A DNA stretch of 56,705 nucleotides, from NCBI GenBank assembly GCA_000708835.1, contig DF237528.1:1-56705 (forward strand), given 5' to 3'. Made by a program: the position numbers and the translations under genes. Below the pieces are notes generated by a model. That model saw only the letters and a list, made by a program, of their open reading frames with translations, had not been told where the DNA came from and did not search any database. The stretch is from Klebsormidium nitens. Taxonomy: Eukaryota; Plantae; Klebsormidiophyceae. Positions within the stretch are counted from its first letter, which is position 1. Every line of letters starts with the position of its first letter. Positions 11,494-26,796 of the stretch are shown piece by piece.

Positions 11494-11876
11494 NNNNNNN
11501 NNNNNNNNNNNNNNNNNNNNNNNNNNNNNNNNNNNNNNNNNNNNNNNNNNNNNNNNNNNNNNNNNNNNNNNNNNNNNNNNNNNNNNNNNNNNNNNNNNNN
11601 NNNNNNNNNNNNNNNNNNNNNNNNNNNNNNNNNNNNNNNNNNNNNNNNNNNNNNNNNNNNNNNNNNNNNNNNNNNNNNNNNNNNNNNNNNNNNNNNNNNN
11701 NNNNNNNNNNNNNNNNNNNNNNNNNNNNNNNNNNNNNNNNNNNNNNNNNNNNNNNNNNNNNNNNNNNNNNNNNNNNNNNNNNNNNNNNNNNNNNNNNNNN
11801 NNNNNNNNNNNNNNNNNNNNNNNNNNNNNNNNNNNNNNNNNNNNNNNNNNNNNNNNNNNNNNNNNNNNNNNNNNNN
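11494..11876. other. Assembly gap (N run)
   Basis: 383 N. Confidence 0.99.
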
Positions 11877-18800: not shown

Positions 18801-21800
18801 TTACAAATTTGGCGTGAGGTAAGTTCCGCTCTTGCACCGGGGGAAGAAGCTGTCCGGGGGAACGAACCCGTCGCATCCCGCGGAGTCGCAGCAGATGTAT
18901 CTCCCCAGCGGGTCGTTGTTGTACCAGCAGCGCAAAGGGAAGCTTGCAGCGGCCCCGGTCCCGCACACGCCTAGGCATAAAACACGTGTCGATTGGCGTT
19001 TCGCCCCGGCCACAAGTGCATGATCTCAACTCTCCAGCTTGGCACCTACTGGTGGATCATGACGGGCCGCAGCCATTTCACCAACAAATAAAGACCTGAA
19101 GCTCTGACCTCTCGGGAACGATGACCGCTGATCCCAAACAGGCTTTCCGGGATTCGAAGAGGCAGATTGCAAATTGGGGTCGCGTGGCTGTGAGACAGCT
19201 GATAAAGCCAAGTCCCTTTTCTGCCCTAGTGACAGAGCGCCTTGAAACCTCCCCTACATGATATCGGCTCTCCTTTGCCGCCTTCCAGGTTGAAGGGAGT
19301 ATCAGCTTCTGAAAACAAGCGGACGGTAATTCATAAAGCTTTCTTTACGGTCGTACAAAGTGACCGGATCGCATGCGAGCTTTTTAAACCTACTGGCAGA
19401 GCCGTACAGAGTATTAACATGTTTAACACGCACGCGGAAACTCGTTGAGTCTGGGTGAAAAGGGGTTCCGTATTTGAAACACTTCCGCTTTCCGACTGCG
19501 ACGCATTTTCCATCAAACGGCCACGACCCTGAGAAACGCCACGTGAGCGGGTCGACAAAGCCTTTCAATAAACGCTTTGTGTATCGAACCAGGAGACATG
19601 GGAAGAGAAAAATGAGTCCGCTCACCCTGCGAGCCACTCGGAGGCTCAGGGGAGGGGGGCGACGCCCCGACGCCAAAGTTAGGTGGCACGTAGCCGTAGT
19701 TTTTGCAGTGGGGGGTCAGGTTGTCGGCGTTGAATCCGTCGCAGCCCTGCCCATCGCAGCAGACGTAGCGCCCCTGGGGGTCGCTGTTGAACCAGCACCG
19801 CGTCGGGAAGAAGGCCGCGTCGCCCGAGCCGCAAACACCTGCAGGGGACGGCACGCCTCGTGACGGCTTGCACAAAACACAGTGCCAACGCCTGTGTGGA
19901 ACCAGCTCAGCCCGAGCTTATGTTGCGGGTGAGCTTTGAAGCGACCGGATGATTCTGAACACAGTCGTGCACCAGTCGGAAGCGTGCTGGATCATTGATC
20001 CCCGGACTTCGATTGTTCATTAAGACGAGATTCGGTTTCACATCGATTCTGATCCTGCTGCAGAGTCGAGATGAATGGCGGGTAACCTTTTCGACGCAGC
20101 TTTTGAGAACCCAACCTGCTACTGAGGACGCACACTGCCCTGGAAAGGTGACATCAGTGGTTACGCTCAAGTGAAAGGAAGCAGCAAGAAGAACTTTCTG
20201 GAAACCAATCAGCTACTTGGGCACTACCTTTCCAACACGAGGGAGCGAATGAAGTTTCTTGGCGATTCTGCCGGGGCGACTCGTCCAGCTCCCCCGGAAC
20301 TTATAGATCTGACAAAATTCTCCATCGGCTGGATACGTCAACTGAACGATATGATTCGACGCCAAGACCGGCTGTGCAAAGAAGCAGAATGCATCGTAGT
20401 CTGGTCTCCGATCATCCCTGCTTGCAAAGAACAGAGTACGGCATGAGCTTGTGATTTAAGGAGACTGTTGCTGCCGGATAGGGTCAACCCCAAACGTCGA
20501 GACGAAAAAGCGGAGACTCTTAGCGGAGTATCGTACCTTCGGATCCACTCGGGAGGGGGCCCGACGGGGGCGAGGTTGCCGGGGGGGTAGACGGACTCGT
20601 CCCCACGCCGAAGCCAGGTGGCACGTAGCCATTGGCCTTGCAGTGGGGGAAGAGGTTGTCGGGGGGGTTGAAGCCGTCGCAGCCGGCCGCGTCGCAACAG
20701 ACGTAGCGCCCCTGAGGGTCGTTGTTGAAGTAGCACCGGACAGGGAACGCGGCCGCGGAGGTGAAGCCACAAACACCTGCCGAGTGGAACATGTGATACG
20801 TTTTGGAAGTGGCCCTTCGATCAGGAAGACCCGAGCTCAAGCTACAGTCTATCGTTCCCTTCCCGGATCTCCCAGCGACGCAGAGTCGAAAGTGCGCCTC
20901 AAGGGCCCATTGCTGCAAGTTCGCTAACGCGTCGGAAGGCAGCGGGCTGCACACACCCGCTCAGGAGAGGGATCGTGCATCTGTGTCTTTGGAGATAGTC
21001 TAGAGCGAGTTGCCCAGTTTGCGCCGTTTCGAATGCCGACTGATCTTTGAGATGCAATTGCACTCTTCGTTTGTCTCAATCTGCAATAGGAGCGGGTGGG
21101 AATAGCTAGTAGCTACGAGTTCGACGCTCGCTTTTTCTGAGCTTTTTCTATGCAACGGAGGCTTCTCAGATTTCTTCACTAGTCAAAGAAATCAAAGTCG
21201 TCCTTGCAGCCTCGAATCTAGGCCTCACCTTGAAAGCCGCTCGGTGGGGGGCTAGACTTCTTCACCGGTGTCGGGTACTGGCCATTCGGGACCCTGCACG
21301 CAAGATGTCCGTCATCAGACACGTCATGCACACGGGTTGGTCAAAAAGCCGCATTCGGATAATATGGAACAACCAGGGTTTGTTCATGCTGGGTTAGGTA
21401 CCATTGGACGGAACTCGTTTGCTCAGGGATTGGCGAGCCTCCTTATTCAAGCACGACCAAGCGGCAGACGAGGTAAGCAACCACATGACAGCTTAGTAGG
21501 AGCTGGATACCTTTGAAAAGCGTCTTTCAGAAGTTTTCTTTGTGAGAGTGCCGCCAGCGAATGAGAGCTGTTGAGCTCTTCAGGCCAGATGCAGACAAGG
21601 TCAACACAGGGGGGGATACTCCAGGAGCTCTCAAACTGGACGGCCAAGTTTGCGGAGACAACCGGTCAGAGCTGGATTCGCTTCAAGAACATATAGAGAA
21701 ATCCGGAACGCACATTCACATGTGGGTCGAAGCACCCATCTCTTACTTTCGAATCTCCAACAGGGGACGACTTGGATCACTCACGAAAGGGCGCAGGTCT

Positions 21801-23451
21801 TCCCGAGAAACCCAAAAGGGCAGGCGCAAGTGAAGTCGATGACCTGGTTGCTGTTCTCCCCCTCAGGGATGGGACCCAAACGGTTGCCAAACTGTACGCT
21901 GCATGTACCCCCGTTCTCGCAAGGGTTGGGACTGCATGGGTCCCGACCTGCACAGTAGAATTAGCCCTTTGCAAAAGCGGACGGCCAAGTGAGCCTGTTG
22001 ATGTGGATCATTGAAGTCCACGACGTCCTAAAGGGACTTTGTAAGTCCAGGCTGTTCTTGAGAGTACATTCAAGTGGGAAAGCGCAGGTGATTTTGCGAG
22101 GAGACTTTTCTGTGTAATCTGCATGTAAGGATTTTTTTTCGTAATGCTTCTGCAGAGCCACGTCGGAAGCTTTGGCAAGATTCCCAGGAGCGAATACGAC
22201 TAGGCCCGAACAGTACTTCATCTTATCATTCCAATACAATAGAGATACAGTTGAAAAAGGTCAAGTGCCCCTCGACTTATAAGGTCATGGCTGAGGTGCT
22301 AAGAGGTGGTTTGGTTGACAAATCGGTGGTCAGGGTAGAGGCTGTTACCTGGGATGAAGCAACTGATGTGATTCCCAATGCCCTTGGTACTCTGGTAGTC
22401 TCCTCGATAATATGGGGGGTTGCACACGCATATGTGCTGGTACGAATAACCAGCGATGGAGCCGGACGGGTTCTGCACACACACGTTGCCTGCAAGCACA
22501 CAAACAGAGAAGGGAAGTACATTATTAACCATGTTTGTCTGAAGCTCTTTCGAAAATCTTAAAGCTGCCAACTACCGTCTTGTGATGGCCACACCCACCA
22601 GGCAGATACTGAGTTCTCCCCATGAGAATAACAAAAGCGAAGGCCAATAGGAAAAAGATAATAAGGATACGGAGAGACAAAAGTGTCAAGGAAGTAGGAA
22701 ACTTGCATGGGTCCCACTCCTCAAACAAGACGGTGAAGTAGACGGGCTTTAGAGAAAGAGGTGAGGAGAAGTAAACAAGACAGTGAAGGATCAAGAAGAA
22801 ACAAAAGTCTGAATGGTAAGGTTGTGTCTTAGGCCCTTCTGAGGGGCCTGCAGGTTGAAACTTAGTTGAGAGCCAACGAGAATGACGAGCAGGGTTCTCT
22901 GCAGGTGTGTTGCAACAAAGAGAGCAGAGCCATAAACGAGAGGAAGCGGGAAGGATTGGGGCGCAGCAGCCATGCTTGATACCTCGCAGAATCTTCAGAT
23001 TGGGAGTTTTCCTTGATGATTTGATGTTGAGATACTGACAAAAATGTAATAAACAAACCACTGCAAGGCACTCATCTAGTAGACTCTGCACAGATTGGTG
23101 GAGGAGCTGGCAACCCCTTCCGGGAACCTTTGGTTCAAAAACAGCAGGAGATACCAAGGGTCTATTTGCTTGGCAGACACTGCCAGTAATGTCCATCCTT
23201 CCTTCCAGTTGGGCAGAATAGGCAATGAGAATGCCTCAAAGGAACATACCTGGGCCGCAGCCAACTACCTCATTGTAGCACTGATCGGCATCGCACTCAA
23301 CAAGGTCGGAGGTGCCCCGTTGGATAGGTATGAACCCCGGCGGGCAGGTGTAATCAGCTGCTAGTGCATTGGTATACTCCTGAGCTGATACTGAGAAAGG
23401 CGAGACGCACAAGAGCGCAAGCGCCACAACTAGGAGGCAAGTGGGTGCCAT
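18801..23451 (-). CDS. Secreted modular Cys-rich protein: signal peptide, 2 EGF-like modules, 3 tandem copies of an unrecognised 6-Cys module, Pro-rich linkers; 7 exons, 397 aa
   Basis: Exons 23250-23451, 22349-22489, 21785-21947, 21229-21293, 20537-20776, 19626-19838, 18801-18970; all GT-AG, intron phases 1,1,2,1,1,1, total 1194 nt open. N-term [24 protein letters not shown]; [31 protein letters not shown]. Confidence 0.85.
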
Positions 23452-25076: not shown

Positions 25077-26796
25077 CTAAGGTTCGCGTATTGACTCAGG
25101 CGTCCTTGCGGGCGTGGTGATGTTCATGCTGGCGCGCAGCATCCAGGAGGTCGGATACACGCTGTCCCGCGCCGCCTCTGCGCGCAAGTGCCACACCAGC
25201 ACCTCCCGGCAGTCGTCCGCCAGCCCCTCCATCTCCGCCTCACTGCCCACCAGCTGCTCGATAAACGTCGTCTCCTGGAACCCCTCCTTGATGTTATCCC
25301 GGAACCGAACCGGCGCGTTCCTCCGCCGTCCCTCACCCCCTGGCTCCCACATCAGCGACGAATTGAACGCAAAGCCGCACAGGTCCGAGTGGAAGCGCCG
25401 CTGCGCCGCGCTCTCTTCGCTGGTGTGCCACCCGATGACCCGCCCCCCGGCGCACACAGGCCCCTCGATCGTCGTCTTCTCGGCGCCTTCCACGAGCATG
25501 GCCACCGGCAGGACGCCAAAGCGCTTGACCTTGCGGATCTCCTCAAAGAGCTCGACGCTGTAGTTGTTGTCGTCGTCCGCAAAGTAGACGATGCCCTGCA
25601 GCGCGTGCTGCTGGATGTGGTCGAGCGCGTGGTTGCGCTGGTGCACGCCGCGGTCCTTGTGCTGCGGGCTGAATTGCTGCACCACCAGGTGGCGGTACAT
25701 CAGCCCCGTGCGCATCAGCAGCGCCACGCTCTCCTCGCTCTGCCACCCCGTCTCTACCACGATCCACAGCACCGGCGGCCGCACCAGGCGCAGCGTGTGC
25801 GCCAGCCGCGTCAAGTACATCGCCTGCCAGGACAGATGGCATAGGGTGAGAAGAAGAAACTAAGGTCCCAGCCACTTTATCTCGAACAGAGAGGAGGAGG
25901 ACTATACTCGTGTGACCCGAACAGGACTGTTGCAAACGAGACGGACAAAACAGGACGCATCTTTTCTGCATCACCCTCCTGAAAGTTCGCTCCATGCTGA
26001 GCGTCCAGCCAATAGTGGACCAGGAACGGATTCATTAACAGCCAACAAGCAAGGGCGCCCTGTTTTCGCTGGTAAAAAGGTGTAACAAAGGACCCCTGCG
26101 ACATGACACGAAAGCGGCATAACTCCTTCAGATGACTTTCTCGGATGCAAACCTTGCTTCGCTCACTTTCTCGACTTTGTCAATGGCTTGGGGCCAAGTC
26201 TGCTGGGATCATAGATATGCCTCCATCCATTGCCGCATTGCGGGGAAGGAAGAGTGTGGATGGCAGCCCGCTTAAAAGCAATGCATACCGCATTACGATA
26301 TCGTGGTTCGAAAAGATAATTGCCCCACCCTGCCGTTCCCTGGAAATGTTACCGTTTTTCAAGCAACAGTGGTCAGATTCGAAGAAGCATCATTTGCAGC
26401 CTGCCAGCACAGCCTGTTCAAATCTGTCGAGAACTTCATGGATGATGCCAAGTCCGTGTCATAAGGACATGCCAGATCTCCAACATGGGGGCTGCCCGTG
26501 CCTTCATTTGTCCACTATAGGTCAAAGACGTCGGTGTTGTTGCCGCGGGCGCCTCACCTGGAAGGGCCGATTGTACGTGGGTGTGACAATCAGCAGCTGG
26601 ACGGGCGCCTCGAGGCGTGGCTGCGCCGGCAGCTGCTGTTGCACCAGGATGCGGCTGGCCCCCGCACCCACCAGGCCGCGCTGCTCATCCTCAAGGGCCT
26701 GCCCCGGGAAGCTGTGGGAGACGGCGTCCGGAAAAGAGGCCTCGAAGCGGCGCGTGTCAAACACCCCCAGCAAAAAGCCGAGCAGGAAACAGAACC
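25077..26796 (-). CDS. GT43 glycosyltransferase, IRX9/IRX9L-like (xylan backbone synthesis complex); 5' exon unresolved
   Basis: Exons 26558-26796 (FLLGFLLG TM, LLIVTPTYNRPFQ) and 25077-25823 (YLTRLAHTLRLV, DRGVHQRN, YFADDDN, IEGPVC..VIGWHT, GFAFNS, KEGFQETTFIEQLV). Confidence 0.93.

What the first reader, a model, noticed from the sequence alone, without database searches (positions are those of the whole stretch)
18801..20776. Unrecognised about 45-aa six-cysteine module repeated three times
Seen: [134 protein letters not shown]. Consensus C-x11-C-[WY]-[FY]-N-x-D-P-x-G-R-Y-x-C-C-D-x2-G-C-D-G-F-x3/4-D/N..P-x-C. Protein is conserved while flanking introns are not, implying selection. Inference: conserved aromatics plus N/D residues suggest a disulfide-bonded carbohydrate- or Ca-binding module.
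Basis: partly seen in the sequence, partly recalled or inferred. Interest (0 to 1): 0.8.

Follow-up and report, generated by a model that had tools for sequence, protein, structure and literature searches.

The report
Klebsormidium-only six-cysteine module, three exons
The three repeats are real: they are the last three exons of an annotated but uncharacterised secreted protein gene of the land-dwelling green alga Klebsormidium nitens, and they encode a small disulfide-rich domain that matches no described family or solved fold, occurs only in this genus, and most likely serves as a repeated binding or anchoring unit outside the cell.

Summary
Observation confirmed. Three copies of a module of about 55 aa with six cysteines lie on the minus strand. 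Each is on its own exon, with a phase-1 intron before each and between them (the last exon ends at the stop). The window is K. nitens scaffold DF237528.1. The gene is KFL_005790050 (GAQ89934.1, 397 aa, "hypothetical protein"), seven exons at 18801-23451. Its layout is signal peptide, EGF-like region, EGF domain, Pro/Ser/Thr linkers and three modules.

No Pfam match at E<=10 for any of 39 copies, and no PDB sequence match. AlphaFold gives the same four-strand pattern for all copies. It has no structural neighbour by Foldseek, by VIA against 48,161 chains, or in the ESM Atlas.

An exhaustive profile search of 1.84 billion representatives found 24 real clusters. Every one that carries a source's organism name is Klebsormidium. 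At least 15 K. nitens genes carry the module, as do K. subtile transcripts and a few environmental contigs.

Copies are under purifying selection (dN/dS 0.05-0.45) and introns are unrelated. Two divergent subtypes with the same C-C-CC-C-C spacing exist in paralogues.

Function is untested. Multivalent extracellular (probably wall-glycan) binding is my best guess.

This scan already found the same module on other pieces of this genome (s1-299410, s1-299500, s1-313253). It is a further case, not a first.

The parts
23250..23451 (-). Exon 1: ATG at 23451, signal peptide (about 23 aa, hydrophobic core, V-S-A before Q), start of the first EGF-like Cys-rich region; ends in phase 1 at a GT donor
   Evidence: conserved against L001
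22349..22489 (-). Exon 2: rest of the first EGF-like region (C-x-C signature); phase 1 on both sides
   Evidence: only sub-threshold Pfam hits; predicted beta hairpins
21785..21947 (-). Exon 3: EGF domain; ends in phase 2
   Evidence: PF00008 25.8 bits against a cut-off of 21.5
21229..21293 (-). Exon 4: 21-codon Pro/Ser-rich linker exon, phase 2 in and phase 1 out; ends with the P-P-S-G-x-Q-G motif that precedes every module
   Evidence: (same small exon in L001)
20537..20776 (-). Exon 5: module A (20601-20774) plus a 21-aa linker that is 76% Pro/Ser/Thr
19626..19838 (-). Exon 6: module B (19666-19836) plus a 13-aa Pro/Ser linker
18801..18970 (-). Exon 7: module C (18804-18968) and the TAA stop (18801-18803); no hydrophobic tail, so no GPI or membrane anchor signal

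Best explanation
SHOWN. The three repeats are exons 5-7 of the K. nitens gene KFL_005790050. The gene encodes a 397-aa secreted protein with no membrane anchor: signal peptide, an EGF-like region, one EGF domain, then three copies of a six-cysteine module of about 55 aa, strung on disordered Pro/Ser/Thr-rich linkers. The module is an independent, selected domain family known only from the genus Klebsormidium. It has no detectable relative among described families or solved folds. It is moved and copied as a phase-1 exon cassette, and is attached one to four times to several different secreted proteins.

INFERRED. The module is a non-catalytic binding unit. Three disulfides hold a small four-stranded sheet. 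The sheet presents a near-invariant surface (aromatics at positions 11, 16, 17, 25, 36 and 50; Arg14, Asn18, Asp20, Arg24, Asp29). Tandem copies on probably hydroxyproline-glycosylated stalks give multivalent, avidity-based attachment to an extracellular ligand. That ligand is most likely a polysaccharide or glycoprotein of the alga's own wall or matrix, so the N-terminal EGF part would be tethered there. The confidence given is for this inferred mechanism; the shown part I hold at about 0.95.
For: Gene and product: my GT-AG exon model translates exactly to P0006 = GAQ89934.1, whose contig length of 56,705 bases equals the window. The EGF domain is above the Pfam threshold.

Fold: the single-module AlphaFold model has pLDDT 83. 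In the full-length model all three modules repeat the same pattern (short helix, then four strands), while the linkers score below 50.

Orphan status.

Distribution: 24 real clusters among 1.84 billion representatives. All hits that carry an organism name are K. nitens or K. subtile. At least 15 K. nitens genes carry the module.

Cassette behaviour: the module sits behind different N-terminal parts. These are EGF pairs, an LDL-receptor-A-like repeat protein (P0018), other Cys-rich repeats (P0015) and an unrelated region (P0007, P0019).

Selection and age: dN/dS is 0.05-0.45 with saturated dS. C-terminal modules of different genes group together (support 92/98), so the array is older than the gene family.

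Linkers: 69-76% Pro/Ser/Thr with S-P-P runs, the motif class that green plants hydroxylate and glycosylate (established knowledge of HRGPs).

Transcription of relatives: complete ORFs in the K. subtile transcriptome (EukProt EP00243), and an intron-free 376-aa ORF on a 1.85-kb JGI contig.
Against: No binding was tested. No family member carries a glycoside hydrolase or other enzyme, which is the usual company of carbohydrate-binding modules. The partner domains (EGF, LDLa-like) are classic protein-protein modules. No structural or sequence similarity to any known CBM was found. In a 55-aa domain the conserved aromatics may simply be the core. The five single-module models ranged from pLDDT 83 down to 50. 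I found no transcript of this particular gene in the collections.
Confidence: 0.45

Rival explanations
1. The module mediates protein-protein contacts, such as self-association, cross-linking of matrix proteins, or cell-cell and cell-substrate adhesion, rather than binding a glycan. The proteins would then be matrix or adhesion proteins built wholly of interaction modules.
For: The partner domains are EGF and LDLa-like, which are protein-interaction modules in other lineages. No enzyme partners were found. Klebsormidium is filamentous and lives in soil crusts (general knowledge).
Against: There is no evidence for a partner. The very high conservation of the whole module across at least 15 paralogues (69% mean column identity) fits one common, invariant ligand better than many protein partners.
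Confidence: 0.2
2. The protein is a polyprotein precursor. The linkers are cut and the modules are released as free knottin-like peptides of about 6 kDa, acting as antimicrobials or protease inhibitors, as in multi-repeat plant peptide precursors.
For: The C-C-CC-C-C spacing is that of knottin-type peptides. A conserved motif (P-x-G-[SD]-Q-G) directly precedes every module. Copy number varies from 1 to 4.
Against: No conserved basic or Asn/Asp cleavage site follows the modules. The conserved junction is equally well explained by the shared phase-1 splice site. Single-copy members embed the module between other domains (P0015, P0018, P0019). No solved knottin matched the model.
Confidence: 0.12
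3. The module is a Ca2+-binding structural spacer, as calcium-binding EGF or LDLa repeats are. Its conserved Asn/Asp residues (N18, D20, D29, D34, N37, D39) coordinate calcium to stiffen the array.
For: There are several invariant or near-invariant acidic and amide residues. The module co-occurs with EGF and LDLa-like repeats.
Against: There is no match to any known Ca-binding motif or Pfam model at E<=10. Asp34 is Asn in 11 of 44 copies and Asp39 is Gly in 8. The N-x-D-P-x-G stretch lies in the loop between the first two predicted strands, so it may simply be a structural turn (inference).
Confidence: 0.1
4. The module is a very divergent member of a known family, for example hevein/CBM18-type chitin-binding domains or another knottin-like CBM, that sequence and model-based fold searches failed to recognise.
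For: It shares the CC doublet, followed four residues later by a G-C-x-G-type turn, and the six-Cys C-C-CC-C-C order seen in six-Cys hevein-like peptides (comparison from memory, a lead only). Small disulfide domains often escape fold searches.
Against: Zero Pfam hits at E<=10 for 39 copies. Zero of 48,161 PDB chains reached Z>=2. Loop lengths (11, 11, 0, 4, 11) differ from hevein, and the hevein Ser/aromatic sugar-binding residues are absent.
Confidence: 0.1

Closest known systems
Hevein-type chitin-binding modules (CBM18), including six-Cys hevein-like peptides and the Solanaceae lectins that alternate hevein modules with extensin-like stalks
   Same: Small (40-55 aa) disulfide-rich extracellular module with an adjacent CC pair. 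Repeated in tandem, joined by Pro/Ser-rich (hydroxyproline-type) linkers, and non-catalytic. The overall 'lectin beads on an HRGP string' architecture is the best analogue.
   Different: No Pfam PF00187 hit at E<=10, no fold match, different loop lengths, no conserved Ser-aromatic-aromatic sugar site. Ligand unknown. Restricted to one algal genus.
Knottin / inhibitor-cystine-knot peptides
   Same: Six cysteines in the order C-C-CC-C-C, a small beta-sheet core, and the capacity to occur as tandem repeats.
   Different: Loops 1 and 2 are long (11 residues each). Disulfide connectivity is unknown. No solved knottin matched the model. The module is embedded in larger multidomain proteins, not a free peptide as far as is known.
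Fungal CBM1 cellulose-binding modules on Pro/Thr linkers
   Same: A tiny disulfide-stabilised module with conserved aromatics, attached by a glycosylated Pro/Ser/Thr linker to the end of a secreted protein.
   Different: CBM1 has about 36 aa and four Cys, is appended to enzymes and is usually single. Here there are six Cys and 1-4 copies, and the partners are EGF-type modules, not enzymes.
EGF-domain extracellular proteins
   Same: Exon 3 encodes a bona fide EGF domain (PF00008 above threshold). The whole gene is built of phase-1 exon cassettes, the classic exon-shuffling layout of extracellular modular proteins.
   Different: The three C-terminal modules are not EGF. They have a different Cys pattern (CC doublet, no C-x-C) and no Pfam EGF hit.

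Membership tests
EGF domain (PF00008), for exon 3 only | Pfam model match above the gathering score; six Cys with the C-x-C signature | tested here: met
   25.8 bits against a cut-off of 21.5 for window:21787-21945:-. Paralogues score 17-27 bits.
Hevein / CBM18 (PF00187) | Profile match to Chitin_bind_1 | tested here: not met
   No Pfam family at E<=10 for any of 39 module copies.
Hevein / CBM18 (PF00187) | Hevein fold in a structure comparison | tested here: not met
   Foldseek PDB best E 6.5. VIA-align found 0 of 48,161 chains with Z>=2. A weak test for so small a model.
Knottin / ICK | Cysteine order C-C-CC-C-C | tested here: met
   Invariant C3, C15, C27, C28, C33 and C45 in 44 copies.
Knottin / ICK | Disulfide map 1-4, 2-5, 3-6 with a threaded knot | not testable with these tools
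   Model coordinates are not exposed. Needs MS disulfide mapping or a structure.
Knottin / ICK | Structural similarity to solved knottins | tested here: not met
   No PDB match.
Peritrophin-A / CBM14 | Six separate Cys without a CC doublet; Pfam CBM_14 match | tested here: not met
   A CC doublet is present. No Pfam hit.
Klebsormidium six-Cys module family (as seen elsewhere in this genome by this scan) | Same consensus (V-C-G ... R-C-[WY]-[FY]-N-x-D-P-x-G-R-Y-V-C-C-D-x-x-G-C-D-G-F ... P-x-C-K), own phase-1 exon, C-terminal tandem copies behind EGF domains | tested here: met
   Profile hits E 1e-31 to 1e-34. At least 15 K. nitens proteins share it. Phase-1 exons confirmed.

The most novel reading that the evidence does not exclude
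The module is a new fold and a new carbohydrate-binding family. It evolved within Klebsormidiophyceae and recognises a wall polymer of this land-dwelling alga (for example callose or a lineage-specific glycan). With its two divergent subtypes, it would form a genus-specific toolkit for tethering EGF-type matrix proteins, linked to filament cohesion or desiccation tolerance.
Probability: 0.25. Interest if true: 0.6.

Novelty: new variant of a known kind. Interest (0 to 1): 0.4.

Why it matters
Klebsormidium is a reference organism for how green algae first coped with life on land, and its extracellular matrix is poorly understood at the protein level. At least 15 secreted proteins of K. nitens share a strongly selected domain that no database describes. 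That marks a lineage-specific piece of wall or matrix biology that current annotation labels only 'hypothetical' or 'EGF-like'. If the module binds a defined wall polymer, it would add a new small binding domain. Such a domain could be useful as a probe for algal walls, and it would be a clear example of exon-cassette invention outside animals. If it does not, it remains an ordinary orphan Cys-rich repeat. The finding repeats what this scan already saw on three other pieces of the same genome.

Tried and rejected
- Pfam: nothing on the three exon ORFs, on 39 single copies, or on the two divergent subtypes.
- PDB sequence profiles A2 and A6: only chance hits, E>1.
- Foldseek PDB, VIA-align wide and ESM Atlas shape search with the pLDDT-83 model: no neighbour. 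Best TM by query was 0.44, on unrelated families.
- ESM Atlas feature search, on a single module and on the three-module tail: no usable hit.
- P0026, the one non-algal hit of the exhaustive search (E 7.7e-4): a Cys-free bacterial repeat protein that shares only a G-R-Y-V-C-A-D-like word. Rejected as chance.
It returned only three Klebsormidium-type proteins, so it is uninformative on absence.
- Metagenome DNA scan: only three loci, all from one JGI sample.
- Literature: no paper holds the locus tags, the accession or the motif words. General searches on Klebsormidium secreted or Cys-rich proteins gave nothing relevant.
- Rfam on the window: nothing.
- Exact look-up of P0006 found only the GenBank record, so there is no independent transcript of this gene.
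- The R-G-D tripeptide in exon 2 is not conserved in L001. Treated as chance.

Full report
**1. What is in the sequence**

The three quoted peptides are all on the minus strand.
- Module A is window:20601-20774:-.
- Module B is window:19666-19836:-.
- Module C is window:18804-18968:-, followed by a TAA stop.

Each module begins two bases after an AG acceptor. Modules A and B, with their linkers, end one base into a codon at a GT donor. Each copy is therefore preceded by a phase-1 intron, and exons 5 and 6 are phase-1 on both sides.

A profile of 44 family copies run over the six-frame translation of the whole window finds exactly these three (E 1e-31 to 1e-34). The next best score is noise at E 1.7. 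DNA similarity between the three exons (74-77% identity) stops within 2-4 nt of the acceptor and never enters the introns. Pairwise dN/dS among these copies and three copies in a related locus is 0.05-0.45, with dS from 0.4 to saturation.

**2. The gene**

I followed open frames, GT-AG sites and conservation against a related metagenomic locus (L001). This gives seven exons:

| Exon | Coordinates | Content |
|---|---|---|
| 1 | 23451-23250 | ATG, signal peptide |
| 2 | 22489-22349 | EGF-like region |
| 3 | 21947-21785 | EGF domain, PF00008 25.8 bits against a cut-off of 21.5 |
| 4 | 21293-21229 | 21-codon linker, converts phase 2 to phase 1 |
| 5 | 20776-20537 | module A plus linker |
| 6 | 19838-19626 | module B plus linker |
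| 7 | 18970-18801 | module C plus stop |

The sum is 1194 nt, or 397 codons.

I searched exon by exon, by reference, and sent no joined model to any search tool. The exhaustive protein search then returned a 397-aa database protein, P0006. From that point I used P0006 by id. The only joining I did was inside a script, to check that my exon model equals P0006, and it does exactly.

P0006 is GAQ89934.1, hypothetical protein KFL_005790050 of Klebsormidium nitens. It lies on a contig of 56,705 bases, which is the window's own length. The record is DF237528.1 of GCA_000708835.1, with the gene at 18801-23451 reversed. The gene is therefore annotated; only the C-terminal domain is undescribed.

The product has a cleavable-looking signal peptide and 34 cysteines. 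It has no hydrophobic C-terminus, so there is no GPI or membrane anchor signal. The linkers are 46-76% Pro/Ser/Thr with S-P-P runs.

**3. The module as a family**

In 44 aligned copies, C3, C15, N18, D20, Y25, C27, C28, C33, G35, F36, P43 and C45 are invariant. G1, G4, G6, A8, F11, P12, R14, P21, G23, R24, D29, G32, G49 and P52 are nearly so. The unit extends past the sixth Cys through a conserved K-N-x-G-Y-V-P-P tail.

An exhaustive HMMER search of 1.84 billion cluster representatives found 25 proteins at E<=1e-3. One is a Cys-free bacterial repeat protein that shares a single word and is chance. The other 24 are real.
- Every hit that carries an organism name is K. nitens, or comes from the K. 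subtile transcriptome of EukProt.
- The rest are unnamed JGI, ENA or Logan contigs of the same type.

A word search with the three-module tail lists 15 K. nitens genes. A DNA-pattern scan of 241 million metagenome records found only three loci, all from one sample.

Most members share this gene's layout, with one to four modules. Other members place the module behind different parts:
- an LDL-receptor-A-like repeat region (P0018, below the Pfam threshold);
- other Cys-rich repeats (P0015);
- regions without any Pfam match (P0007, P0019).

In a tree of 44 copies, most C-terminal modules of different genes, including module C here, form one group (support 92/98). Module B groups with internal modules of another gene. 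The array is therefore older than the gene family, although the tree is short and mostly unresolved.

**4. Two divergent subtypes**

Paralogues carry two further modules with the same C-C-CC-C-C order.
- Subtype 2 lies between the EGF domain and the canonical copies. Its motifs are C-L-Y-x-D-G-x-H-Y-x-C-C and C-G-P-x-G-P-D-G.
- Subtype 3 lies at the extreme C-terminus of some proteins. Its motifs are N-S-C-F, H-V-C-C and N-P-D-S-C.

Profile-profile comparison gave these results:

| Comparison | Probability | E-value |
|---|---|---|
| canonical vs subtype 2 | 95% | 3e-8 |
| subtype 2 vs subtype 3 | 86% | 5e-6 |
| canonical vs subtype 3 | 2.9% | 0.016 |

The first link is solid. The link to subtype 3 is probable but only transitive. 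Neither subtype occurs in this gene, and neither has a Pfam match.

**5. Structure**

AlphaFold2 on module B with a 39-row alignment gave mean pLDDT 83 and pTM 0.66. The five models ranged from 83 down to 50. The model shows a short helical turn and four short strands, at T-R-C-W, Y-V-C-C, C-D-G-F and P-H-C.

The full-length model (pLDDT 65) reproduces the same pattern in all three modules. The linkers score below 50, which gives beads on a string.

No structural neighbour was found.
- Foldseek against the PDB: best E 6.5.
- VIA-align against 48,161 chains: none with Z>=2.
- ESM Atlas: TM by query at most 0.44, on unrelated families.

For a 58-residue model these blanks do not prove a new fold.

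**6. How it most likely works**

Shown: the protein is a secreted modular protein without an anchor signal. Its tail is three copies of a strongly selected, genus-restricted, exon-cassette domain on disordered Pro/Ser/Thr stalks.

Inferred (about 45%): the module is a non-catalytic binding unit, and its tandem copies give multivalent attachment to an extracellular ligand. That ligand is most likely a wall or matrix glycan, which would tether the EGF part. The reasons are:
- near-invariance of the whole module, including Arg, Asp, Asn and six aromatic positions, across old paralogues;
- variable copy number;
- stalk-like linkers of the kind that green plants hydroxylate and glycosylate (established knowledge of hydroxyproline-rich glycoproteins);
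- the analogy with hevein modules on extensin-like stalks in Solanaceae lectins, and with CBM1 on Pro/Thr linkers.

Against this reading: no enzyme partners, protein-interaction-type partner domains, no similarity to any known CBM, and no experiment.

Rivals are protein-protein adhesion or cross-linking (0.2), a polyprotein precursor of knottin-like peptides (0.12), a Ca-binding structural spacer (0.1), and an unrecognised divergent member of a known family (0.1).

**7. Expression**

I found no independent transcript of this exact gene. Relatives are transcribed. The K. subtile Trinity transcriptome holds complete ORFs. A 1.85-kb JGI contig carries an uninterrupted 376-aa ORF spanning the EGF domain and three modules, which genomic copies split with introns.

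**8. Comparison, novelty and verdict**

The module is not a member of any family I could test (see the membership table). By architecture it resembles small disulfide-rich binding modules on glycosylated linkers. I rate it a new variant of a known kind: an undescribed, genus-restricted domain family on ordinary-looking secreted modular proteins.

Notes of this same scan had already reported the module on three other pieces of this genome (s1-299410, s1-299500, s1-313253) and this very gene in another window (s1-310263). I confirmed their main points independently: the organism, the orphan status, and the module's attachment to different secreted proteins. I add the census, the subtype links and the position-specific grouping.

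Interest is 0.4. The finding is real and clean, but the function is untested and this is not the first sighting.

Noticed in passing
window 25077-25820 (-): The next large ORF upstream on the same strand is a glycosyltransferase family 43 domain (PF03360, E 7e-68, full profile length). This is the family of plant xylan-backbone IRX9/IRX14 enzymes, so a wall-synthesis gene sits beside a putative wall or matrix protein gene. No link between the two was tested.
   Followed up: partly
L001 7234-7317 and 8220-8339 (+): The related metagenomic locus holds two partial module relics inside its introns. Each is a first half only, ending at the N-x-D-P-x-G-R-Y or R-C-W-F stretch. Three database fragments (P0003-P0005) start an exon exactly at G-R-Y-V-C-C. 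Some relatives may therefore split the module with an extra intron, or carry decayed duplicate exons.
   Followed up: no
paralogues P0030, P0031, P0032, P0037, P0010, P0040 (subtype 2); P0017, P0018, P0019, P0024, P0029 (subtype 3): Two divergent six-Cys modules with the same C-C-CC-C-C order occur in paralogues but not in this gene. By hhalign, subtype 2 is homologous to the canonical module (95%) and subtype 3 links to subtype 2 (86%). This suggests a small genus-specific superfamily.
   Followed up: partly
window 22400-22392 (-), exon 2: There is an R-G-D tripeptide in the first EGF-like region. It is not conserved in the related locus L001 (K-G-T there), so it is probably chance.
   Followed up: partly
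window 11494-11876: A run of 383 N (assembly gap) lies well outside the gene.
   Followed up: no
P0015 (KFL_008230020): This one-module family member continues with two copies of a different, long Cys-rich repeat (with C-C-I-D-Q-P-P-Y-D-Q-L-C-G-D and S-T-C-C-L-D motifs), separated by a Thr/Pro-rich stalk. The repeat has no Pfam match either.
   Followed up: no
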